Positions 33,102 through 54,394 of a stretch of 64,000 nucleotides of DNA are shown piece by piece; position 1 is the stretch's first letter, and each line of letters begins with the position of its first letter. The DNA is from Obrimoposthia wandeli (taxonomy: Eukaryota). Both the position numbers and the translations under genes were made by a program. The notes beneath the pieces are model-generated. The model searched no databases. It was not told where the DNA came from and was given only the letters and a program-made list of their open reading frames with translations. The DNA is taken from positions 62,001-126,000 of the forward strand of contig CDROCS010000882.1 in the NCBI GenBank assembly GCA_977020255.1. Reading direction: 5' to 3'.

Positions 33102-33677
33102 TTACATTGAGCTGGCTTTTTGATGGACAACATCATAAACCGAACCAAATGATTGTTTAACATTTAAGTCCATATTGATATGCAGTTTCCTTGCTATATC
33201 ACTAGATGAGATTACGCCCCGAATATGATGACTTTCTCTATCCAGTACTAGGCAATGGCGAAGTTGATAATCTTCTAACGTTGCCACCACATCACCAACA
33301 GATGCCCGTAGCAATTCGTTGTAGTCAAAGGCATGGAAACCTGATTTAGGGATCATTAGGTCTTTGACTAATACATCTTCACGAGCAATACCTTTAGATA
33401 ATTTTGCAACAATATTTTGTTCTGATAATTCATTGGTACTAATAATACCAATGAATTCATCATTTTCAGCAACGACAATGTTCATTCTAACGTGCGTTTT
33501 TAACATCAATTGTAATGCTGTTATCGCCATCGTTTCTCCGTCAATCATTAGTGCTTTATGAACTTTAAAATCAGTAAATATTTCTACCGCGGGTGATTCT
33601 AAATTAATTTCTTCAAATTGCTCTGGAGATATAATGTTGTCTGTAGCTTCTAAGTTAACTAACTGTAATTTTTTCAT
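33102..33677 (-). CDS. CBS-domain protein
   Basis: ESPAVEIFTDFKVH, IGIISTNEL, VLVKDLMIP, HIRGVISSSDIARKL. Confidence 0.85.
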   Translation of the reverse strand: MKKLQLVNLEATDNIISPEQFEEINLESPAVEIFTDFKVHKALMIDGETMAITALQLMLKTHVRMNIVVAENDEFIGIISTNELSEQNIVAKLSKGIAREDVLVKDLMIPKSGFHAFDYNELLRASVGDVVATLEDYQLRHCLVLDRESHHIRGVISSSDIARKLHINMDLNVKQSFGSVYDVVHQKASSM

Positions 33678-33737
33678 ATGTGCCTCTAAATTTTTCTATG
33701 CACTTGTTACCAGTATGTTGACTGGTTGATAGGGTCT

Positions 33738-34000
33738 ATACCCGATCCACTTTAAAACGCAGATTTCAGCAAGTCGATAACGGGTTAGCACCAAGGCATT
33801 GATTGAAGGGAATAGTCATTCTATTCTCGAAATCAATAATGCCTAAGATGATCCGTTATCGGCTTGCCCGTGGGGCGCTATGCTAGAAAATCAGTCCAGC
33901 GTTGCGATACTTGATAAGGGAGTGACCATTATCAAGTATCGCGCCTTGGGCTAAATTCCTAGCTTAGCGCTGAAACTGCATCTTGAAGTGAAACGGGTAT
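33738..34000. mobile_element. ERIC-like miniature inverted-repeat element (about 263 bp)
   Basis: Imperfect TIRs atacccgatccactttaaaacgcagatttcagc / gctgaaactgcatcttgaagtgaaacgggtat; nested internal hairpins; no ORF. Confidence 0.75.
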
Positions 34001-34274
34001 TTACAAATGCTAATAACTATATTTCAATAATGAATAACGCTGTGCTTATTGAGTTGAACTGCCTATCTAAAACCAACTTACTGTAGTAACTGATAACGTT
34101 TAAATATCAGATGGATTTTAAATAACCCTAACGGGTACAATCAGGTGTCTTAAGCCGTTTATTTAGCGCTGGGCTTAATAGTATTAACTGTTGCGAACTC
34201 AGACTCAGCAATTGGACTATGCTCTTTCGATAAATAAAGAATAAATAGAATAATCCTCAACGTAAATTTGCATG

Positions 34275-34571
34275 TTATGCAATAAATGTGGATTGAAAAA
34301 TAATGAGTGGAGGTGCTCTAGAATGAAAACTTTGAAAGTAGGATTGAACAATGAACGGATTAAAGTAACTTAACTTTATATTTCTATCTGGTGACAATTG
34401 AACAAGTACTGAAAGTAACAATGCTGGGCTGTCAAAATCCAGATTATCAGTTTGTTCAATTTCTACAATATTTGTTTCGGTAAAATTTAAACCACTTAAA
34501 GAGACTAAGCCTGTTTCATTAGCTGAAACCGTCGGTAGTAGCATACTTATAATGAAGAGTAATTTAAACAT
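34275..34571 (-). CDS. Small signal-peptide protein with near-C-terminal RAPP motif (candidate ribosome arrest peptide)
   Basis: MFKLLFIISMLLPTVSA...FQSFHSRAPPLIIF; RAPP codons at 34319-34308. Confidence 0.6.
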   Translation of the reverse strand: MFKLLFIISMLLPTVSANETGLVSLSGLNFTETNIVEIEQTDNLDFDSPALLLSVLVQLSPDRNIKLSYFNPFIVQSYFQSFHSRAPPLIIFQSTFIA

Positions 34572-35031: not shown

Positions 35032-37674
35032 TTAATCTATATCTTCACTTTCATCTTGCGACTCGTATTCTTGCTCTATCGTTGGTAAGCCATCTTTTGC
35101 TGCAAAATATATACTAACGGGCTCAGAATAGTTTGGTACATCATCATAACTGAACACAGAATAATATTTTTCGACATTTGCATTCGCAAAGTTATCATAG
35201 GTAAAGTTATCTGGACCCCCATAAAGCTTAACGCCATCAATAGGTGATTTAGGTGGGTGAAAACGATTCCTTACCACTATATTACCTACAAAGTCAGTGT
35301 CACTCGGATTATCCCACATGAGTTTTGTCATGCCATTTTCTAGCATAGTTGATAAATTAGACGCTGATTTAATAGGGTTTTTTCTTCGTTCAATATACTC
35401 AATAACCAATTCAGGCAATTGCTTATCACCTTCACCACACCAACTAACAAATTCATCATATTCAGTTGATGAAGCCGTGGCTCGAATAATAAAGTAACAA
35501 GGTTGATTTTTTTTATGTAAATTTTCTAGATCTTGTCGACAGTAGCTGTCAAACATAAAATGATGAGTCTTCTTTTCTTTCAATTGTTGGTTGCTGACTT
35601 CATAGCCAATGAACTCTTTTTTCTCTCGCTCTTTAACACTTTTAAAATCTATATCTTTTAGCGCTGCAAGTTCAATCGTAAAGCGAATATCTTTTTGTGT
35701 ATTTAATGCCGACATATTACGCATTATTAAATATGCATTAGTGATGACTGTCCTATCGGGCTCTGGTAAGGTCTCAAGTGTAAATGCCATTTGACCATAG
35801 ATGATCTCGCCTTGTTTATCAAAACCAGATCTTAATTTGTTCTCGACAAGTTTATCAATGGTGATGGTGTTTAATGCCGTAGGCGATAATTTAATTTCTT
35901 CTGGCGTACGGCTATAAATTAAATGCAAATTAGGTCGGTAATGAATACCTGCACCAAATTTTCCATAACCAATATCGAATTGCATAATTTGAGAGTCGGC
36001 ACCTAACGGTAATGTTCTGGGTCCTTCCACACGCAATAAAATTTTACCTGACTTAATCGCTTTTTTTAATAATAGGCGTTCCGTGATATTAAACGGCCAC
36101 TCACTCCAAATTCCTTGTGTGAGTTGATCAGAGGTAACCGCTTGCCCAAGCGTTTGCATGGGGGTCGCTTTATTTATTTGCTCGAAACAAGTGATATCGG
36201 TAACGTCATTAAAATCCAGTAAAGAAATGCTCCATTCGCCAAAACTTTCAACTTTGGCATTCACACGATTCATTGGGTATAACGAAAAATGGGCTAATTT
36301 AATCATCGCATCATCAGGAATATTATTCAGATCGAAAACAATAACACCATAGCAAATACCTCTGCGTTTATTTACGCCAACAAACAGTGAGTTATGACCG
36401 AAATGCTCACAATTTTTTTCTGTGTTATATTGGCTAACATAGCCAACCTCTTGATTAGTTGGAAACAATGCTCGCGAAAAGTCGTCTCTTGCTAATTGTG
36501 TTTTTACTTTTAACTCAGGGCTAAAAGGAGACTTTAAACTGTTAACACGATCAACGGCTCGAATATTGTAATAATAGTTTTGGCCACTTTTTAGCTGCAC
36601 ATCACTAAATGAAAGACCTCGCGTTATCGCGAGTAATGTTTCATCGCAACACGCCGATTTTAGCTGTTGTGAACGATATATTTCGAAGTTAACTTCTAAA
36701 TTTTTATCATAGTGCCAACTAAGTTCGGTGCTCGTACTACCAATATTAACAATAGAAAACTGCTCAGGCCTTTTTGGTGCAAGCTCGGAGTAACTTATTG
36801 CCTCGGTCAGGGCATGCAAAACTGCCGGGATATTTTCATCAACGCTCTGCGACATGTTCACTAAATAATCTGGAATGTTACGCGTACCAACCTCAACTAC
36901 GACAGCTAAAATTCCCAAAGAATAATAATATTCTCTGCCGCTGCCATGAATTAGGTTAGCGGGTGGTTTTCCGCGGTGGATACCATATTTTTTGCCCGTT
37001 ACTTTGAATATTTCACGATTCATATTGGCACATAATATATTCAAATCGGTACCATCTAACTCTGTTTCATGATTAAACTTATGAGCAGGGAAGAATACAT
37101 TCCCTTGAGAGTGATAATCTAACGCCAAGGTAATGTTTTTATGTGTTAAAACAAAATCACGAATAGCACAAGACTCAGGCTCAGAGAAAGCTTCAGGGCC
37201 CGCATAAGTATTCAAACTTGTATCTGCATTATGTTTAAATCTAATAGAAAAATTTCGGTTTAAATCAACACCGTAACTTCCATCATGATTTTTTCTTCTG
37301 TTTTTTCGCCAGAAAGAAAAATGATTACGTGAATATTCAAAACCATCGGGGTTTAAGCAAGGCACCATATAAAGTGTATTGCGCGTCAACGCCTGCTTTA
37401 GCTTTGGATTAAATTTATAATTGTTAATAACGTAATCAATAAATTTAATTGCCAGTTCATTCCCGATCCATTCCCTAGCATGGACTGTTCCGGTGTAGAG
37501 CAAGGCGGGTTTATGATCGGCATACTCAACATCTAATGATATGGTGACCAGCACAATTGGTCTTTGCTCCCAAGTTTTACCAATACAACGTAGCCGAATT
37601 AAATGCGGATTTTCTGCCATGCTTTTTTCAAGAAACGCTAGTGTTTGCTGATAAGATGCATATTGCTTTTTCAT
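35032..37674 (-). CDS. M14 zinc carboxypeptidase with FN3-like and further C-terminal beta domains, no signal peptide
   Basis: HARE, NPDG, WRKNR, GVDLNRNF, FSEPES, DYHSQG, VEVG; FN3-like LSW..FEIYRS..YYYNIRAVD. Confidence 0.88.
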   Translation of the reverse strand: MKKQYASYQQTLAFLEKSMAENPHLIRLRCIGKTWEQRPIVLVTISLDVEYADHKPALLYTGTVHAREWIGNELAIKFIDYVINNYKFNPKLKQALTRNTLYMVPCLNPDGFEYSRNHFSFWRKNRRKNHDGSYGVDLNRNFSIRFKHNADTSLNTYAGPEAFSEPESCAIRDFVLTHKNITLALDYHSQGNVFFPAHKFNHETELDGTDLNILCANMNREIFKVTGKKYGIHRGKPPANLIHGSGREYYYSLGILAVVVEVGTRNIPDYLVNMSQSVDENIPAVLHALTEAISYSELAPKRPEQFSIVNIGSTSTELSWHYDKNLEVNFEIYRSQQLKSACCDETLLAITRGLSFSDVQLKSGQNYYYNIRAVDRVNSLKSPFSPELKVKTQLARDDFSRALFPTNQEVGYVSQYNTEKNCEHFGHNSLFVGVNKRRGICYGVIVFDLNNIPDDAMIKLAHFSLYPMNRVNAKVESFGEWSISLLDFNDVTDITCFEQINKATPMQTLGQAVTSDQLTQGIWSEWPFNITERLLLKKAIKSGKILLRVEGPRTLPLGADSQIMQFDIGYGKFGAGIHYRPNLHLIYSRTPEEIKLSPTALNTITIDKLVENKLRSGFDKQGEIIYGQMAFTLETLPEPDRTVITNAYLIMRNMSALNTQKDIRFTIELAALKDIDFKSVKEREKKEFIGYEVSNQQLKEKKTHHFMFDSYCRQDLENLHKKNQPCYFIIRATASSTEYDEFVSWCGEGDKQLPELVIEYIERRKNPIKSASNLSTMLENGMTKLMWDNPSDTDFVGNIVVRNRFHPPKSPIDGVKLYGGPDNFTYDNFANANVEKYYSVFSYDDVPNYSEPVSIYFAAKDGLPTIEQEYESQDESEDID

Positions 37675-37697
37675 AATTTCCCTTAACTTATTAACCG

Positions 37698-39128
37698 CTA
37701 AAAATATTTCTGTTTATCATTCGCGTATTCAATAGCAATAGTTTGCTGCCAATGTAAAACGATGGTGTCTAGCTTCTTTTCTTTGAGGTTTTTAACTTGT
37801 AGAAAGTGATAGGGGTGTAGATTTAAAGCATCAAGTGTCCCTTGAACGCCTAAGGTCGAAATAATTGATAAAGATAGCTGCTTCCCTATACCTTTTACTG
37901 ATTGAAAAAAATCATTTAGCTGCTTTTCATCTAAATCAATAAAGGGCTGTGTTTTCTCTTTTAACGCTATGGATTCATTGTCTTCTAGGCCGCAATCATT
38001 AATTAATGCTTGCTTATTTTCAATCACACTTTGCTGAGACTGTGATAAGTAGTTGTCTTGAAAATTCCAGTATTCACTAGGCCACTCTTCAAATGCTCGT
38101 AACTCAACAGGTAGCATCTGATATTGCTCTTTTGAGAGTAAGGCAAGATTATCTGAGCAGTCTTCACTCGCGGTATATTCTCCAAAGGTAATATGACGCA
38201 TTGTTCGCAGCAGCTGACTGTTTAATTTTCCCAACTCTTCCCAATTGTAGATTGGGATATTGGGCTTACTGGCTGTTTTAGGAGACAACATCCACATAAT
38301 ATATTGTCCTATCCAGTCTCTAATATATGGGAACGCAGCGAAAGCAGTAGCACATTCAAGAATACGGAACTTACCATCATACCCCTGTGCTATATCGCAC
38401 GCCCAATACTCGGCATTTGAAAACTTAGAAGCTTTTACTGCAATATCTAGTGCTTCTTTTGGGACATTAGCATAATCAATAGCACCGCCTTGACTCGTGT
38501 TAGTCAGCCATTCACCTTCAGGTGGGCGTCGCCAAAAGGCGCAAACAGGCTTATGCCCCACTAGCATAATGCGTATGTCTGCAACCATAGGAACAAACTC
38601 TTGCACATAAATAGGGTGGTAACGTTTTTCAGCAAGCAATAGTTTTACTTGTTGAACGTTATCGACTTTATGTACAAAGTAGCCACCGTAATTGGATGGA
38701 CCATATGATTTTTTTATAATTTTGGGGTATCGACAGTTTTCAAGATAATCTAAGGCTGCTTTTTTATCGTAAAAAACATCTGTTCTAGGTATGGGGAGTT
38801 GATATTTTTTGCAAAAATTGGTCACATTTTCTTTAGATTTATTTGAGAACTGCGCGTCAAGCGACGGGATAAATTTTACCTTTGGTAATGCTTTTGAAAT
38901 TTCACGAAAAGTTTCATACGCAGTTGCAGGTATATTGCCTATCAATATATCTATCTTCTTTAGCTTAACTTCATTTATAAAGCGTTTTTTATCCTTTCCC
39001 CAGTGATAAACCACTGATTCTATTTTAGTTGGCCAGCCTTTAAAGTTAGAAGCGTTAAAAAAACGTAAAACATGATCGAGATAAACAAAACCTAATTTTG
39101 GTAATTCTTTAGAGTGTTCCTGTTCCAT
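37698..39128 (-). CDS. RimK-like ATP-grasp protein with C-terminal helix-hairpin-helix domain; start set at MEQEHSKE
   Basis: IIKKSYGPSNYGG, YVQEFVP, DIRIMLVG, WLTNTSQGG, WACDI, RILECA; C-terminal FQSVKGIGKQLSLSII..VKNLKEKK. Confidence 0.8.
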   Translation of the reverse strand: MEQEHSKELPKLGFVYLDHVLRFFNASNFKGWPTKIESVVYHWGKDKKRFINEVKLKKIDILIGNIPATAYETFREISKALPKVKFIPSLDAQFSNKSKENVTNFCKKYQLPIPRTDVFYDKKAALDYLENCRYPKIIKKSYGPSNYGGYFVHKVDNVQQVKLLLAEKRYHPIYVQEFVPMVADIRIMLVGHKPVCAFWRRPPEGEWLTNTSQGGAIDYANVPKEALDIAVKASKFSNAEYWACDIAQGYDGKFRILECATAFAAFPYIRDWIGQYIMWMLSPKTASKPNIPIYNWEELGKLNSQLLRTMRHITFGEYTASEDCSDNLALLSKEQYQMLPVELRAFEEWPSEYWNFQDNYLSQSQQSVIENKQALINDCGLEDNESIALKEKTQPFIDLDEKQLNDFFQSVKGIGKQLSLSIISTLGVQGTLDALNLHPYHFLQVKNLKEKKLDTIVLHWQQTIAIEYANDKQKYF

Positions 39129-39159
39129 AGTATATTTCCAATGTTGTTTAAATTTTAAA

Positions 39160-40065
39160 TTAATCCTGTGTGACACGAGTGATTAAATCGACAATCTTAT
39201 TAATTTTTAACTTATTAAATGCTAATCCTAATTGCTGTTGCTCAGGTGTTGCAAAGGCTGGAATACCGTTAATTTCAAGCACGACATATTCTTCGCGCTC
39301 TAAATCATAAATGAGATCGACGCCAGCTATTTCTAAGCCAGTAATCGCCGCAGCTTTAATGGCTATCGCGATGGCCTCATCACTTGGCTCTCGCAAAAAA
39401 ATGCTACCGCCGCTGGTAATGTTTGTTTTCCAACTATCTTTTGGGGCTTGCCTGCCATAACAACCGACATATTGGCCATCAACTATATCGATACGATAAT
39501 CCGTCATATCATAATTAACGTATTTTTCGACATAAAAATAAGGAATATTGGTCTGCTCTAGAAAAGGAAAAAGCATGTCGAGTGCACGTTCATTCTCAAT
39601 TTTAACAATTCCCATACCGCCCCAACCATCAGTAGGCTTATATATCAAACGATCTCCCCAATCTTTTAAGGTTTTCTTAAGCCCTTTTTTATCACCACGC
39701 CTTAACATTTTGTATTCTGGCGTTATCACACCCGCTTGATTCAATTTATGGGAGGTTCTGAACTTATCTTCAGTGAGTGCAAAAGAAGTAAAATTATTCA
39801 AACAAGGAATAGTTTCATTGAGTGTTTGATATAAATACATTTGATACTGCGTTTGCTTACCGGCGTTATATGAAAAAAAAGCATCAAGCTCTTCCATCGC
39901 GGTACCGCGACATATTATTCGGCCATTGGTCGCTCTTGCATTGGTCAAATTTAAATCACTAACCACCGCAATATCACGTTCTTCTAGCTGATGAATTATT
40001 TCATTTTGAATAATTTCACCGCCACCATTTTTATACATCCACATACCTACTTTGCACTTAGACAT
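39160..40065 (-). CDS. RimK/LysX-family ATP-grasp amino-acid ligase
   Basis: EDKFRT, LIYKPTDGWGGMGIV, YVEKYV, DYRIDIV, WKTNITSGG, AGVDL, VLEINGIP. Confidence 0.88.
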   Translation of the reverse strand: MSKCKVGMWMYKNGGGEIIQNEIIHQLEERDIAVVSDLNLTNARATNGRIICRGTAMEELDAFFSYNAGKQTQYQMYLYQTLNETIPCLNNFTSFALTEDKFRTSHKLNQAGVITPEYKMLRRGDKKGLKKTLKDWGDRLIYKPTDGWGGMGIVKIENERALDMLFPFLEQTNIPYFYVEKYVNYDMTDYRIDIVDGQYVGCYGRQAPKDSWKTNITSGGSIFLREPSDEAIAIAIKAAAITGLEIAGVDLIYDLEREEYVVLEINGIPAFATPEQQQLGLAFNKLKINKIVDLITRVTQD

Positions 40066-40153
40066 TGTTCACCCTTTTATTAAAACAGCAGATTTCCATA
40101 TGATATCGACAGAGCTTATTCATTTTTTGTACAACATTTCATTGCTGTTAATT

Positions 40154-40187
40154 AGCGTAAATCGCCGTTGTTACTAATATATGACGA
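40154..40187 (-). promoter_or_regulatory. Pho-box-like site plus -10 facing the ATP-grasp operon
   Basis: TCGTCATATATTAGTAAC (13/18 to CTGTCATAWAWCTGTCAY), 10-nt spacer, TACGCT. Confidence 0.45.
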
Positions 40188-40205
40188 AACAGCTTTGTCT
40201 AAAAA

Positions 40206-40239
40206 CCTTCATAAATCTGTCGTCATACAGCCTTATAAA
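40206..40239 (+). promoter_or_regulatory. Pho-box-like site plus -10 facing the M20 peptidase
   Basis: CCTTCATAAATCTGTCGT (15/18), 10-nt spacer, TATAAA. Confidence 0.5.
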
Positions 40240-40276
40240 ACCGATGAAATAACCCAAATGTTGGATTATTTAAGGA

Positions 40277-41410
40277 ATGAAGATGTCTCAATCTCTCGAT
40301 CGGGTGCAAACAAGTGATTTCTCTGAGTTATCAGAGCTAATTCAAATAAACTCATATACAAAAAACAAAGCAGGTGTTGATAAGGTTGCCCAAATTTACT
40401 CGGCATGGATGCTAGCGTTAGGCTTTAAAGCCGAGCGTTACTGTCGCGAAATTATTGGTGACCACGTACTTTACCGCTCTCCCTCAGCTACCGGTAAGCG
40501 GGTTTTATTATTAGGACATTTCGATACGGTATTTCCGCCTAACACTTTTGAAGGTTTTTCAGAGGACAACGAATGGGTTTACGGCCCAGGAACATGTGAT
40601 ATGAAAGGGGGGAATTATGTTATTCTCAAAGCACTTAGGCATGTGAAAAGTATGCATGGTGAGATTAAAAACATCGATGTCCTTATGGTAAGTGATGAAG
40701 AAACAGGGAGTGACGATAGTAAACATGTAACAGCAAAAATAGCCAAAAACTATGAACTATGCTTAGTTTTCGAGGCTGCTGGGGTAGAAAATGAAATCGT
40801 CATAGCACGTAAAGGAGTTGCTACATTTCATATTGATATTAAAGGTAAAGCTGCTCATGCAGGTAATCATTACAGTGATGGTGTCAATGCTAATTTAGCA
40901 GCAGCGCATATGATCATTGAACTATCGTCTCTGACGCGATCTAGCTTTGGTACCACAGTCAATGCCGGAAAAGTTACTGGGGGCATTGGCGCTAATACTA
41001 TTTCGCCTAAGGCATCGATTAGTGTTGAAGCAAGGTTCACCAACAACGTAGAAAAGGATCGAGTTTTGAGTGAAATTGAACGCATAGCCACAACTTCATA
41101 TGTTAGGGGAACTAAAACCACATTTTCAGGCGGATTACAGCGTGATGTAATGCAAGCCAGTAGTAAACAAATGCTATTAATTACCCAACTTGAAGAAATT
41201 TTAGGACAGCCATTTAAGCTCGAGAAGCGAGGAGGTGTCAGTGATGCGAATGTAGTGTCTGCTTTAGGTATACCAACCCTTGATGGTTTTGGTCCATATG
41301 GAGACGGTGATCACACCATTAACGAACGTGCGAGTAAAAAAAGTTTACTGCAAAGAATTGATGCCGTAGGCAAAATTTTATTAGCATTTAACGGCGTGAA
41401 TGCTGATTGA
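40277..41410 (+). CDS. M20-family metallopeptidase, carboxypeptidase G2-like; start may be 40283
   Basis: LLGHFDTVF, GPGTCDMKGG, SDEETGS, VFEAA, GKAAHAG, GGVSDAN, DGFGP..DHT. Confidence 0.9.
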   Translation: MKMSQSLDRVQTSDFSELSELIQINSYTKNKAGVDKVAQIYSAWMLALGFKAERYCREIIGDHVLYRSPSATGKRVLLLGHFDTVFPPNTFEGFSEDNEWVYGPGTCDMKGGNYVILKALRHVKSMHGEIKNIDVLMVSDEETGSDDSKHVTAKIAKNYELCLVFEAAGVENEIVIARKGVATFHIDIKGKAAHAGNHYSDGVNANLAAAHMIIELSSLTRSSFGTTVNAGKVTGGIGANTISPKASISVEARFTNNVEKDRVLSEIERIATTSYVRGTKTTFSGGLQRDVMQASSKQMLLITQLEEILGQPFKLEKRGGVSDANVVSALGIPTLDGFGPYGDGDHTINERASKKSLLQRIDAVGKILLAFNGVNAD

Positions 41411-53164: not shown

Positions 53165-54394
53165 TTGTTAAATCGTATTTGGAGTGGCTTTTTCTTCGTT
53201 GCCTTTATTTCCTCTATTGTGCAGTGGCTGGTGTTTGACCAAGTATTGGTTTTTGAAGAAATGGTTACAGCCATTTTTGATATGTCTCGGGTCACTGTTG
53301 AAATTGCTATTGGCTTAATTGGGATTTTAAGTTTTTGGCTAGGCATGATGAAAATAGCTGAGCATGCTGGTCTTATTGATAAACTCGCACAATTTATTTC
53401 TCCGTTATTTGTTCGTCTTATGCCTGGCGTGCCAAAGGGTCATCCCGCGATAGGTTCAATGACTATGAACTTGTCAGCAAATTTTCTAGGATTAGACAAC
53501 GCTGCCACACCGCTTGGTTTAAAAGCCATGCAAGATTTACAATCGCTAAATCAAAAAAAAGACACCGCTTCTAATGCGCAAATACTTTTTTTAGTACTCA
53601 ATACCTCGTCAGTAACGTTATTTCCGGTCACTGTTTTCGTTTATCGCGCCCAACAAGGCGCGCAAAATCCCACTGATGTTTTTGTGCCGATAATATTAGC
53701 AACATTTGCCTCGACTCTCGTCGGATTATTTACGGTGGCATTCGTGCAAAAAATTAAAATTGCTCAGCAGGTTATTTTACTTTATTTATCGGCCGGCATT
53801 GCCCTCATTGGTGGTGTTGTTGTTTATTTTAGTACCTTAAGTACACAGCTGTTGGCGCAACAATCTTCTTTGATGGGAAATTTGTTAATATTTAGTACGT
53901 TGATCAGTTTTATATTTTTCGCCTTAAAACGTAAGGTTAATGTTTATGACAGTTTTATTGAAGGCGCTAAACAGGGCTTTGATACGAGTATAAAGATTAT
54001 TCCCTACCTGTTAGCTATGTTGTGTGCAATCGGGGTATTTAGAGCCAGCGGTGCTTTAGATATTCTGGTGGACGGTATACGACAACTTGTTTTATTTTTT
54101 AATGGTGATATCCGCTTTGTTGATGCTTTACCTACTGCATTTATGAAGCCTTTAAGTGGCTCAGGTGCCAGAGCTATGATGATTGAAACCATGAACACTC
54201 ATGGCGCTGATTCATTTGCTGGTCGTTTGGCTTCGATTGTACAAGGCTCGACAGAAACTACATTTTACGTGCTTGCGGTTTATTTCGGCTCAGTTGGCAT
54301 TCGTTACTCTCGTCATGCTTTAGCTTGTGGACTGATTGCTGATGTGGCAGGTATAACCGCAGCCATTGGCGTTTGTTATTGGTTTTTTGGTTAA
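53165..54394 (+). CDS. Fused SpmA/SpmB nucleoside-recognition (Gate) membrane protein
   Basis: ANFLGLDNAATPLGLKAM, KPLSGSGAR, QGSTETTFYVLAVYFGSV. Confidence 0.9.
   Translation: MLNRIWSGFFFVAFISSIVQWLVFDQVLVFEEMVTAIFDMSRVTVEIAIGLIGILSFWLGMMKIAEHAGLIDKLAQFISPLFVRLMPGVPKGHPAIGSMTMNLSANFLGLDNAATPLGLKAMQDLQSLNQKKDTASNAQILFLVLNTSSVTLFPVTVFVYRAQQGAQNPTDVFVPIILATFASTLVGLFTVAFVQKIKIAQQVILLYLSAGIALIGGVVVYFSTLSTQLLAQQSSLMGNLLIFSTLISFIFFALKRKVNVYDSFIEGAKQGFDTSIKIIPYLLAMLCAIGVFRASGALDILVDGIRQLVLFFNGDIRFVDALPTAFMKPLSGSGARAMMIETMNTHGADSFAGRLASIVQGSTETTFYVLAVYFGSVGIRYSRHALACGLIADVAGITAAIGVCYWFFG

What the first reader, a model, noticed from the sequence alone, without database searches (positions are those of the whole stretch)
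35032..41410. Two ATP-grasp ligases plus two carboxypeptidases: candidate undescribed peptide-tagging or polymer build-and-trim system
Seen: tight minus-strand operon (gaps 31 and 23 bp) of a RimK-like ligase, an ATP-grasp-HhH protein and an M14 carboxypeptidase, divergent from a CPG2-like M20 peptidase; none has a signal peptide. Known: RimK/LysX ligases add Glu or other residues to C-termini or make poly-Glu; eukaryotic tubulin glutamylation uses ATP-grasp TTLL writers and cytosolic M14 erasers; CPG2 removes C-terminal Glu. Inference: a cytoplasmic reversible (poly)aminoacylation system acting on a protein, cofactor or storage/anionic polymer, apparently under phosphate-type control. Substrate unknown.
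Basis: partly seen in the sequence, partly recalled or inferred. Interest (0 to 1): 0.85.

Follow-up and report, generated by a model that had tools for sequence, protein, structure and literature searches.

The report
Conserved two-ligase, two-peptidase marine cassette
Four neighbouring genes (two ATP-driven amino-acid ligases and two zinc peptidases) travel together as a unit in several hundred marine bacterial species and most likely build and trim chains of glutamate inside the cell when phosphate is scarce; nobody has described the system, and what it acts on is still unknown.

Summary
It consists of M14 carboxypeptidase (35032-37674, -), ATP-grasp-HhH "AG2" (37698-39128, -), RimK-like "AG1" (39160-40065, -) and a divergent CPG2-like M20 (40277-41410, +). 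Gaps are 23 and 31 nt, and none has a signal peptide.

All 80 related loci fetched carry the same genes in the same order where the contig reaches. They come from about 535 species genomes that encode AG2, spanning Gammaproteobacteria, Campylobacterota and Bacteroidota. No other neighbour, small ORF or Pfam family is shared, so this is a self-contained four-gene cassette.

- **AG2:** an isolated family (580 bits or more within it, about 80 bits to any other ATP-grasp). An invariant E-C-A replaces the Mg-binding ExN.
- **M14:** M14A-type, with an invariant Arg at the position-255 specificity site, which predicts removal of acidic C-terminal residues. It also carries FN3 and CBM96-like modules.
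- **M20:** keeps every CPG2 metal ligand.
- **Regulation:** Pho-box-like sites with correct spacing to -10 hexamers face both arms.

No curated family, defence model or paper covers the cassette.

Best reading (about 0.4): a Pho-induced cytoplasmic glutamyl-chain build-and-trim module. The acceptor is unknown. It is a new variant of the writer/eraser kind (RimABK, TTLL/CCP). The scan did not report it on other DNA.

The parts
40277..41410 (+). M20 metallopeptidase, CPG2-like, 377 aa, cytoplasmic
   Evidence: Pfam Peptidase_M20 plus M20_dimer. Best PDB match is carboxypeptidase G2, 1cg2, E 2.5e-27. The aligned di-zinc ligands and general base are all kept: H81, D108, E141/E142, E166, H346. It is below every NCBIfam equivalog cut-off. 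It is present next to the ligases in 77 of 80 loci; the three exceptions have contigs that end before it.
40066..40276 (.). Divergent intergenic control region, 211 nt
   Evidence: Sequence. The region holds one of only two matches with 3 or fewer mismatches to the E. coli Pho-box 18-mer in the whole 64-kb window (0.35 expected). No Rfam element was found.
40206..40223 (+). Pho-box-like 18-mer facing M20, followed after 10 nt by a -10-like TATAAA at 40234-40239
   Evidence: 3 mismatches. The geometry is read directly from the sequence.
40170..40187 (-). Pho-box-like 18-mer facing AG1 (5 mismatches), followed after 10 nt by a -10-like TACGCT at 40159-40154
   Evidence: The equivalent site, GTCA-N7-TGTMAY, is conserved at the same position in Colwelliaceae, Alteromonas and Pseudoalteromonas. 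Mean best mismatch over 75 loci is 4.96, against 6.65 in shuffles.
39160..40065 (-). AG1: RimK/LysX-class ATP-grasp ligase, 301 aa, canonical metal site (D250, E264, N266)
   Evidence: Pfam RimK. NCBIfam MptN 124.7 bits, rimK_fam 119.9 bits (cut-off 143.4), S6 ligase 42 bits (cut-off 331). PDB matches are RimK, ArgX and LysX. Found in 80 of 80 loci.
38259..39128 (-). AG2 ATP-grasp module (aa 1-290), strongly basic, with invariant E258-C259-A260 in place of ExN
   Evidence: hhalign places AG1 E264-I-N266 against AG2 E258-C-A260. Net charge is about +10. The closest folds are LysX, ArgX and RimK. The family is isolated: 580-785 bits within it, about 80 bits to anything else.
37935..38258 (-). 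AG2 disordered acidic linker (aa 291-398), containing the motif EEWPSExWNxQ at aa 347-357 (nt 38058-38090)
   Evidence: pLDDT below 50. Net charge is about -10. EEWPSE is exact in 74 of the 85 AG2 proteins checked and differs by one residue in 8 more, but is absent from the divergent subclade.
37698..37934 (-). AG2 C-terminal helix-hairpin-helix domain (aa 399-476) and stop codon
   Evidence: pLDDT about 90. RuvA-domain-II and RecD2 N-terminal hits. HHH_5 or HHH_3 is present in all subclades, and is ComEA-like in the divergent ones.
36784..37674 (-). M14A-type carboxypeptidase catalytic domain (aa 1-297), with no signal or pro-peptide
   Evidence: Pfam E 1e-51. VIA Z 32 to procarboxypeptidase B and carboxypeptidase T. 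Zn ligands H65, E68 and H188, plus R123, N139, R140 and E261, are invariant. R247 aligns with CPB Asp255. The motif GSGREYY occurs in 79 of 79 homologues, and the Arg is kept in divergent members.
35089..36783 (-). M14 C-terminal modules: FN3 (aa 298-395), beta-sandwich (about aa 396-588), CBM96-like beta-sandwich (aa 589-761), FN3-like (about aa 762-862)
   Evidence: Model mean pLDDT 80. VIA Z about 13 to FN3 domains, Z 16.1 to a chondroitin-sulfate-binding CBM (8wab) and Z 14.3 to the alginate-binding CBM96 (7vbo). Sub-threshold DNRLRE hit at aa 412-469. Atlas features point to CBM96. Many invariant residues.
35032..35088 (-). M14 acidic C-terminal tail (aa 863-880, net charge -10) and stop codon
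   Evidence: The tail is present in Colwelliaceae, Alteromonas and Photobacterium but absent in most Pseudoalteromonas and in Campylobacterota, so it is not a universal feature.

Best explanation
This is an autonomous, horizontally mobile four-gene module that works in the cytoplasm to build and trim chains of an acidic amino acid, most likely alpha-linked L-glutamate.

Shown:
- The four genes are inherited as one unit.
- All four proteins lack export signals.
- AG1 has a complete RimK/LysX-class ATP-grasp site.
- M14 and M20 have complete catalytic sites.
- M14 carries Arg at the residue that sets C-terminal specificity.

Inferred:
- AG1 is the main ligase. It would activate a carboxylate as an acyl-phosphate and add Glu.
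- AG2 is a basic ATP-grasp paralogue with a degenerate Mg site, an acidic disordered linker and a DNA-binding-type HhH tail. It partners AG1 and either places the first residue or acts as a targeting or priming subunit.
- The 880-aa M14 enzyme, held on its substrate by FN3 and CBM96-like modules, removes C-terminal Glu/Asp one at a time.
- The CPG2-like M20 enzyme removes the last acyl-linked Glu or splits the short leftovers.
- In Alteromonadales both arms are probably switched on by PhoB under phosphate limitation.

My preferred acceptor is a free or enzyme-primed oligo/poly-glutamate, that is, a phosphorus-free polyanion or nitrogen/carbon store, rather than an S6-type protein tag. The evidence does not settle this.
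For: Unit:
- All 80 loci from three phyla keep the genes in the same order where the contig reaches.
- Divergent members place all four genes in one co-directional operon, with AG1 and AG2 overlapping.
- Among 59 distinct genomic contexts there are 152 different neighbour families and none is enriched.
- No conserved small ORF accompanies the cassette.
- The AG2 tree shows cross-family and cross-phylum transfer.

Chemistry:
- Both ligases match the RimK, MptN, LysX and CofF alpha-L-glutamate ligase models best and the LysX, ArgX and RimK structures best.
- M14 R247 aligns with CPB Asp255. Position 255 sets specificity, and Arg255 in CPO gives acidic specificity (PMC9925722). The Arg is invariant.
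- A second basic residue, H198 or K199, lies at about position 207.
- M20 keeps all CPG2 ligands. CPG2 releases C-terminal Glu (established knowledge).

Polymer lean:
- The cassette functions after transfer between phyla, so its substrate must be universal or self-supplied.
- The exopeptidase carries tandem beta-sandwich binding modules, as polymer-degrading enzymes do.
- RimK itself makes poly-alpha-glutamate, and a dedicated eraser sits in its operon (PMC11957791).

Regulation: Pho-box-like sites lie 10 nt upstream of -10 hexamers on both arms and are conserved across Alteromonadales genera.

Expression: contigs 95-99% identical over all four genes occur in a marine metatranscriptome. This is weak evidence, because DNA carry-over is possible.
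Against: - There is no biochemical or genetic evidence of any kind. The amino acid added is inferred from family resemblance and from the eraser's pocket.
- AG2's ExN Asn is replaced by Ala in every member, so it may not catalyse ligation.
- M14 lacks the Tyr248 equivalent (N240), and the loop around it is modelled poorly.
- The CBM96-like domains are not basic (pI 5-6), which does not favour binding of a polyanion.
- The nearest structural relatives of the ligases modify protein C-termini, and the HhH tail suggests a nucleic-acid-bound target. Both points favour the protein-tag rival.
- The Pho motif is weak outside Alteromonadales.
Confidence: 0.4

Rival explanations
1. A protein-tail writer/eraser. 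The ligases add Glu to the C-terminus or to a Glu side chain of a conserved host protein, such as ribosomal protein S6 or a nucleoid or ribosome-associated protein. The HhH tail brings AG2 to the nucleoprotein. M14 shortens the tail and M20 removes the branch or last residue. This would resemble RimABK or TTLL/CCP.
For: The closest folds are LysX, ArgX and RimK, all of which act on protein C-termini. AG2 has a basic catalytic module suited to an acidic tail. A DNA-binding-type HhH is conserved in every subclade. M14 has Arg at position 255, as Glu-removing carboxypeptidases do. RimK with a co-operonic eraser is a precedent.
Against: No target gene or small ORF travels with the cassette. The cassette crosses phyla, so the target would have to be universal. 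Both ligases fall far below the S6-ligase model. The large multi-module exopeptidase plus a second peptidase looks like more than is needed to trim a single tail.
Confidence: 0.25
2. Small-molecule glutamylation. The ligases add one or two Glu residues to a carboxylate-bearing metabolite or cofactor, as MptN, CofF or the mammalian RIMKLA/B enzymes (NAAG, beta-citrylglutamate) do. M20 and M14 recycle the product.
For: The best NCBIfam hit for both ligases is MptN, and CofF also scores. CPG2-type enzymes cleave Glu from non-peptide acyl groups (established knowledge). The substrate could be a universal metabolite, which would fit the horizontal transfer.
Against: All scores are far below the equivalog cut-offs. 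An 880-aa exopeptidase with FN3 and CBM-like modules and a DNA-binding-type tail on AG2 are hard to explain for a small soluble substrate. No transporter or precursor gene is linked.
Confidence: 0.12
3. Recycling or remodelling of peptidoglycan-type peptides. Ddl-like ligases would rebuild stem peptides that have been cut by an MpaA-like M14 enzyme and a DapE-like M20 enzyme.
For: Ddl structures appear among the fold hits for AG2. MpaA and Csd4 are M14 relatives. DapE is an M20 relative.
Against: M14 is much closer to CPB and CPT (Z 32) than to MpaA or Csd4 (Z 17-18). M20 is closer to CPG2 than to DapE. Ddl NCBIfam scores are negligible. No murein-recycling genes are linked.
Confidence: 0.05
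4. A conflict system: either an anti-phage defence or synthesis of a peptide antimetabolite by two L-amino-acid ligases, with the peptidases providing self-protection or activation.
For: The cassette is mobile, self-contained and sits in variable genomic contexts. Pairs of ATP-grasp ligases build Trojan-horse peptides in other bacteria (established knowledge).
Against: There is no meaningful PADLOC hit (only a sub-significant 13-bit JetA match on M14). No defence, warhead-biosynthesis or exporter genes are enriched nearby. The cassette is absent from phages and from true plasmids. The Pho-type promoters point to a physiological role.
Confidence: 0.05

Closest known systems
RimABK of Pseudomonas (RimK S6 poly-glutamate ligase with co-transcribed eraser RimB and the phosphodiesterase RimA)
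   Same: A bacterial RimK-class ATP-grasp Glu ligase is encoded in one operon with a dedicated enzyme that removes the added glutamates. RimK also makes free poly-alpha-glutamate (PMC11957791, PMC7343187).
   Different: Here the erasers are two metallo-exopeptidases (M14A-type and M20) rather than a retropepsin-like endopeptidase. There are two divergent ATP-grasp proteins, one with an HhH tail and a degenerate metal site. There is no cyclic-di-GMP enzyme. Both ligases score far below the S6-ligase model.
Eukaryotic tubulin glutamylation (TTLL ligases and CCP deglutamylases)
   Same: ATP-grasp writers are paired with M14 carboxypeptidase erasers that are specific for acidic C-terminal residues. 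The split into initiation and elongation, and into chain shortening and branch removal, is a plausible template for two ligases and two peptidases.
   Different: The ligases are RimK/LysX-class, not TTL-class (no TTL Pfam hit). M14 is A/B-like without the CCP N-terminal domain: Z 32 to CPB against 21-23 to CCPs. The second eraser is M20.
LysW/LysX/LysK amino-group carrier pathway
   Same: A LysX-like ATP-grasp occurs together with an M20 hydrolase. LysX and ArgX are the best structural matches for AG2. The main-clade AG2 motif EEWPSE recalls the LysW tail EDWGE; that comparison is from memory and is a lead only.
   Different: There is no LysW-like small ORF and no LysZ, LysY or LysJ genes. Scores are far below the LysX and LysK cut-offs.
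Cyanophycin system (CphA synthetase, CphB cyanophycinase, dipeptidase)
   Same: A cytoplasmic amino-acid polymer made by ATP-grasp chemistry, with the synthetase and the degrading peptidases clustered. Accumulation under phosphate limitation is known for cyanophycin (established knowledge).
   Different: There is no Mur-ligase-like M domain. CphA scores are only 16-44 bits against a cut-off of 850. The peptidases belong to different families.
Carboxypeptidase O, carboxypeptidase T and carboxypeptidase G2
   Same: The M14A fold and catalytic residues are shared, and Arg sits at position 255 as in the acid-specific CPO. The M20 di-zinc site matches that of CPG2.
   Different: Those enzymes are secreted or periplasmic. 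Here both proteins lack signal and pro-peptides. M14 carries a 580-aa C-terminal extension and lacks the Tyr248 equivalent.

Membership tests
RimK, ribosomal protein S6--L-glutamate ligase | Score above the NCBIfam equivalog NF007764 (cut-off 331 bits) or at least the rimK_fam subfamily TIGR00768 (cut-off 143.4 bits) | tested here: not met
   AG1 scores 42.4 and 119.9 bits; AG2 scores 26.2 and 71.6 bits.
RimK, ribosomal protein S6--L-glutamate ligase | Complete ATP-grasp catalytic site (ATP-binding Lys, and metal ligands D, E-x-N) | tested here: met
   AG1 has D250, E264 and N266, all invariant. AG2 has D245 and E258, but Ala260 replaces the Asn in all members. The feature is therefore met for AG1 only.
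RimK, ribosomal protein S6--L-glutamate ligase | Adds Glu to the C-terminus of S6 | not testable with these tools
   This needs an in vitro assay or proteomics. The rest of the genome could not be searched for rpsF or for a canonical rimK.
LysW amino-group carrier system (LysX/ArgX) | A LysW-like small carrier protein and the LysZ, LysY, LysJ enzymes encoded alongside | tested here: not met
   No ORF of 18-90 aa is conserved across genera in or beside the cassette. No other conserved neighbour exists.
TTLL/CCP glutamylation system | TTL-type ATP-grasp domain (Pfam TTL) in the writer | tested here: not met
   Pfam gives only RimK, GSH-S_ATP and generic ATP-grasp families.
TTLL/CCP glutamylation system | M14D cytosolic carboxypeptidase with an N-terminal beta-sandwich domain | tested here: not met
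   The catalytic domain starts at residue 1 and is closest to CPB and CPT (Z 32). CCP structures score Z 21-23.
M14A/B carboxypeptidases with acidic specificity (CPO-like) | Zn ligands HxxE...H, the carboxylate-binding residues R127, N144 and R145, the catalytic E270, and a basic residue at position 255 | tested here: met
   H65, E68, H188, R123, N139, R140, E261 and R247 are invariant. The Tyr248 equivalent is Asn240, which is not conserved.
Carboxypeptidase G2 (M20 glutamate carboxypeptidase) | Di-zinc ligands and general base conserved, and score above the NCBIfam glutamate carboxypeptidase model NF004788 (cut-off 349 bits) | tested here: inconclusive
   All ligands align, but the score is 188 bits, below the cut-off. 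CPG2 is periplasmic, whereas this protein has no signal peptide.
Cyanophycin synthetase | ATP-grasp G domain fused to a Mur-ligase-like M domain (TIGR02068, cut-off 850 bits) | tested here: not met
   Scores are 44 and 16 bits and there is no M domain.
Graspetide / RiPP ATP-grasp systems | A precursor peptide gene next to the ATP-grasp gene | tested here: not met
   There is no conserved small ORF. Scores against the RiPP maturase models are 17-21 bits against cut-offs of 350-425.
Known anti-phage defence systems (PADLOC) | A significant match to a defence-system protein model | tested here: not met
   There is no meaningful hit. The cassette is absent from phage records.
Pho regulon member | A PhoB-type box (two TGTCA-like half-sites 11 nt apart) replacing the -35 element, about 10 nt upstream of the -10 element | tested here: met
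   Boxes at 40206-40223 (+) and 40187-40170 (-) are each followed after 10 nt by a -10-like hexamer. Only 2 such matches occur in 64 kb, against 0.35 expected. The site is conserved in Alteromonadales and weak in other groups. This is sequence-level evidence only; induction was not tested.

The most novel reading that the evidence does not exclude
The cassette makes a phosphorus-free cytoplasmic polyanion, poly-alpha-glutamate, when phosphate runs out. Synthesis would be primed on Glu side chains of AG2's own acidic linker (the EEWPSE motif), in the manner of glycogenin, and kept on the nucleoid by the HhH tail. The polymer would stand in for polyphosphate or RNA as a cation buffer or as a nitrogen/carbon store. 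M14 would then degrade it processively and M20 would remove the branch residue when phosphate returns.
Probability: 0.1. Interest if true: 0.9.

Novelty: new variant of a known kind. Interest (0 to 1): 0.68.

Why it matters
Reversible glutamylation is a major regulatory code in eukaryotes. In bacteria it is known essentially only for RimK and ribosomal protein S6.

This four-gene module has no curated family and no paper that I could find. It is present in roughly 500 species-level genomes of ecologically important marine bacteria: Alteromonas, Pseudoalteromonas, Colwellia, Photobacterium, Endozoicomonas and Sulfurovum relatives.

If it builds and trims glutamate chains under phosphate limitation, it would reveal one of two things. 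One is a new bacterial protein-tail code. The other is a new storage or polyanionic polymer tied to phosphorus stress in the ocean.

It would also supply new enzymes: a cytoplasmic acid-specific M14A carboxypeptidase, and an ATP-grasp with an unusual metal site.

The system is compact and the proteins look soluble and cytoplasmic, so the question can be tested directly.

Tried and rejected
1. I looked for a fifth conserved gene or a small carrier or precursor ORF. Clustering of all ORFs of 60 aa or more, and of ORFs of 18-90 aa in and beside the cassette, found only shadow ORFs or synteny limited to Pseudoalteromonas.
2. I tested the M14 acidic C-terminal tail as a built-in substrate. It is absent from most Pseudoalteromonas and from Campylobacterota, so I rejected it as a universal feature.
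3. I looked for functional hints in neighbouring genes. A Pfam scan of 64 flanking proteins from different contexts found no family in more than 3 of them.
4. Defence system: no meaningful PADLOC hit, no phage copy, and only a 2.1-Mb Photobacterium replicon among plasmid records.
5. Riboswitch or leader RNA: no credible Rfam hit.
6. Literature: six searches found no description of the cassette. The Iyer/Aravind amidoligase survey, under the PMC id I recalled, is not held in the library, so I cannot exclude that the gene neighbourhood was listed there. The supplementary tables of a Pseudoalteromonas phosphate-limitation study did not mention these genes.
7. I tested whether the beta-sandwich modules of M14 are basic polyanion binders. 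Their pI is 5-6, so this is not supported.
8. A search with the M14 C-terminal 566 aa returned, among the 120 best hits shown, only orthologues of similar length (including a few fragments), nearly all with the same M14 domain. It gave no independent clue.
9. The AG2 structure model is only moderate (mean pLDDT 66). No multimer prediction was available to test contacts between AG1, AG2 and M14.

Full report
**1. Observation**

ORF listing and translation give four genes:
- An 880-aa protein at 35032-37674 (-).
- A 476-aa protein at 37698-39128 (-). Its start is the ATG at 39128; the mechanical ORF from the GTG at 39176 overlaps the upstream gene.
- A 301-aa protein at 39160-40065 (-).
- A divergent 377-aa protein at 40277-41410 (+).

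Pfam assigns Peptidase_M14 (aa 12-266, E 1e-51), RimK-type ATP-grasp to both middle genes, and Peptidase_M20 plus M20_dimer to the divergent gene. In NCBIfam no protein reaches any curated cut-off. Both ligases hit MptN, rimK_fam, LysX and CofF best. The M20 hits an uncharacterised hydrolase model and 'glutamate carboxypeptidase' best. The tail of the second ligase gives weak RuvA and RecD2 helix-hairpin-helix hits.

None of the four proteins has a hydrophobic N-terminus. M14 and M20 both begin where the mature forms of their secreted relatives begin.

The flanking genes are housekeeping genes: rne, rluC, a CBS protein, maf, yceD, plsX, fabD and fabG.

**2. The four genes are one conserved, self-contained cassette**

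A scan of one genome per GTDB species found 535 places that encode a relative of the ATP-grasp-HhH protein, which I call AG2. In all 80 loci fetched, the order is M20 (divergent), AG1, AG2, M14.
- In one Crocinitomicaceae locus M20 lies downstream instead.
- In the few loci with a missing gene, the contig ends before it.

The carriers are Colwelliaceae, Alteromonadaceae, Pseudoalteromonas, Photobacterium, Veronia, Endozoicomonas and relatives, Shewanella marina, Sulfurovum and other Campylobacterota, and one Bacteroidota MAG.

None of the window's flanking genes recurs in any locus. Clustering of all ORFs shows no fifth conserved gene. Among 59 distinct contexts there are 152 different neighbour families, and no Pfam family occurs in more than 3 of 64 flanking proteins. 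No ORF of 18-90 aa is conserved across genera.

An exhaustive profile search shows that AG2 is an isolated family. Its full-length representatives score 580-785 bits, and the next full-length ATP-grasp proteins score about 80 bits. The three most divergent representatives still sit beside AG1 and M14. In one of them all four genes form a single co-directional operon, with AG1 and AG2 overlapping.

The AG2 tree mostly follows genera but shows transfers:
- Veronia falls inside Pseudoalteromonas.
- Shewanella marina falls inside Photobacterium.
- A Bacteroidota copy sits beside an Alteromonadaceae copy.
- A Campylobacterota clade sits among gammaproteobacterial clades.

The cassette is absent from phage records. 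Among plasmid records it occurs only on a 2.1-Mb Photobacterium replicon. The window itself groups with Colwelliaceae.

**3. The individual proteins**

*AG1* is a standard-length RimK/LysX-class ATP-grasp with the full metal site, D250, E264 and N266. It is not an S6-ligase orthologue: it scores 42 bits against a cut-off of 331.

*AG2* has four parts:
- A strongly basic ATP-grasp module with net charge about +10. Its closest folds are LysX, ArgX and RimK.
- A profile-profile alignment places its invariant E258-C259-A260 against the E-x-N of AG1. One of the three canonical metal ligands is therefore lost in every member, while the nucleotide-binding motifs are kept.
- A disordered acidic linker of about 110 aa, with net charge about -10. 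It carries the motif EEWPSExWNxQ, which is conserved across the main clade including the other phyla but not in the divergent subclade.
- A confidently folded HhH domain, present in all subclades and ComEA-like in the divergent ones.

*M14* was modelled with mean pLDDT 80. Structural comparison gives the following:

| Residues | Module | Best matches |
|---|---|---|
| 1-297 | M14A/B catalytic domain | Z 32 to procarboxypeptidase B and carboxypeptidase T; Z 21-23 to cytosolic carboxypeptidases; Z 17-18 to MpaA and Csd4 |
| 298-395 | FN3 domain | Z about 13 |
| 589-761 | beta-sandwich | Z 16 to a chondroitin-sulfate-binding CBM; Z 14 to the alginate-binding CBM96 |

There is another beta-sandwich before the CBM96-like one, and an FN3-like domain after it. 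This is consistent with a sub-threshold DNRLRE/CBM96 hit and with language-model features.

The Zn ligands and catalytic residues are invariant. An ungapped HMMER alignment to carboxypeptidase B places the invariant Arg247 at Asp255. Residue 255 sets specificity in this subfamily: hydrophobic residues for CPA, Asp for the base-specific CPB, and Arg for the acid-specific CPO (PMC9925722). The motif GSGREYY is found in 79 of 79 homologues, and the Arg persists in divergent members. A second invariant basic residue, H198 or K199, falls at about position 207.

I therefore predict removal of C-terminal Glu or Asp. There are caveats. The Tyr248 equivalent is Asn, the local pLDDT is low, and the alignment confidence there is moderate.

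*M20* aligns with carboxypeptidase G2 (E 2.5e-27), and every zinc ligand and the general base are kept.

**4. Regulation and expression**

The 211-nt divergent intergenic region holds one of only two matches in the 64-kb window with 3 or fewer mismatches to the Pho-box 18-mer, against 0.35 expected.
- That site, at 40206-40223 (+), is followed after exactly 10 nt by TATAAA and faces M20.
- A second, weaker box at 40187-40170 (-) is followed after 10 nt by TACGCT and faces AG1.

Over 75 loci, the best Pho-box match in this region averages 4.96 mismatches, against 6.65 in shuffled sequence. Conserved sites lie at the same position in Colwelliaceae, Alteromonas and Pseudoalteromonas. The matches are poor in Photobacterium and Campylobacterota.

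This is sequence-level support only.

No Rfam element was found. Scans for promoters and terminators found no more sites than in shuffled sequence, and no convincing terminator within the operon.

A marine metatranscriptome holds contigs 95-99% identical over parts of all four genes, including one that spans the AG1/AG2 junction. This is weak evidence of expression.

**5. Interpretation**

What is firm:
- The module is autonomous and under strong purifying selection.
- It contains one complete RimK/LysX-class ligase and a partner paralogue.
- It contains an acid-specific-looking carboxypeptidase with binding modules.
- It contains an intact CPG2-like hydrolase.
- All four proteins are cytoplasmic.

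The simplest chemistry that uses all four parts is ATP-dependent addition of Glu (or Asp) to a carboxylate, followed by stepwise removal. M14 needs a peptide with a free C-terminal acidic residue. The CPG2-type M20 can take the last acyl-linked Glu or short leftovers.

Because the cassette works after transfer between phyla and brings no substrate gene with it, the acceptor must be universal or supplied by the cassette itself. I lean towards a free or enzyme-primed oligo/poly-glutamate. The reasons are the intrinsic poly-alpha-glutamate activity of RimK, the polymer-style modules on M14, the pairing of an exopeptidase with a finishing peptidase as in cyanophycin turnover, and the Pho link.

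The protein-tag reading remains a serious rival, because of the LysX/RimK-like folds and the HhH tail. AG2 may be an adaptor rather than a second writer.

**6. Comparison with known systems and novelty**

The nearest described system is RimABK. More distant analogues are TTLL/CCP, LysW/LysX/LysK and the cyanophycin system. The cassette fails the defining features of each of them (see the membership table).

I found no curated family, defence model or paper that covers it. One relevant survey could not be read.

I class it as a new variant of a known kind (an ATP-grasp writer with dedicated peptidase erasers), of substantial but unproven interest.

Noticed in passing
window 38058-38090 (-), AG2 aa 347-357: The short motif EEWPSExWNxQ sits inside an otherwise variable, disordered acidic linker. 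EEWPSE is exact in 74 of the 85 AG2 proteins checked, including Campylobacterota and Bacteroidota copies, but is lost in the divergent subclade. It recalls the LysW C-terminal tail recognised by LysX (from memory). It may be a docking or priming site.
   Followed up: partly
window 35035-35088 (-), M14 aa 863-880: M14 ends in a tubulin-like acidic tail with net charge -10. Similar tails occur in Colwelliaceae, Alteromonas and Photobacterium copies but not in most Pseudoalteromonas or Campylobacterota copies.
   Followed up: partly
window 53946-53963 (-): This is the only other match in the window with 3 or fewer mismatches to the Pho-box 18-mer. Its gene context was not examined.
   Followed up: no
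L063:4044-6624 and L066:12111-13961: In an Endozoicomonas MAG the M14 gene is split into two ORFs. In Shewanella marina it is truncated at 643 aa. These could be decay of the cassette or errors in draft assemblies.
   Followed up: no
L082:5921-12182 (also L083, L084): A divergent subclade has all four genes co-directional (M20-AG1-AG2-M14). AG1 and AG2 overlap by 17 nt, and the HhH tail is ComEA-like. This suggests translational coupling of the two ATP-grasp proteins.
   Followed up: partly
window 33102-34571: The CBS-domain gene and the 98-aa signal-peptide ORF downstream of M14, which are the subject of another note, have no counterpart in any of the 80 related loci. They are not part of the cassette.
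   Followed up: partly
It would be worth checking whether it co-occurs with this cassette, as a possible side-chain ligase for a cyanophycin-like polymer.
   Followed up: no
window 35420-41410, run X14: A marine metatranscriptome contains contigs of a close relative, 95-99% identical, covering parts of all four genes. One 993-nt contig runs from 30 nt upstream of the AG1 start codon to the first 26 nt of AG2.
   Followed up: partly
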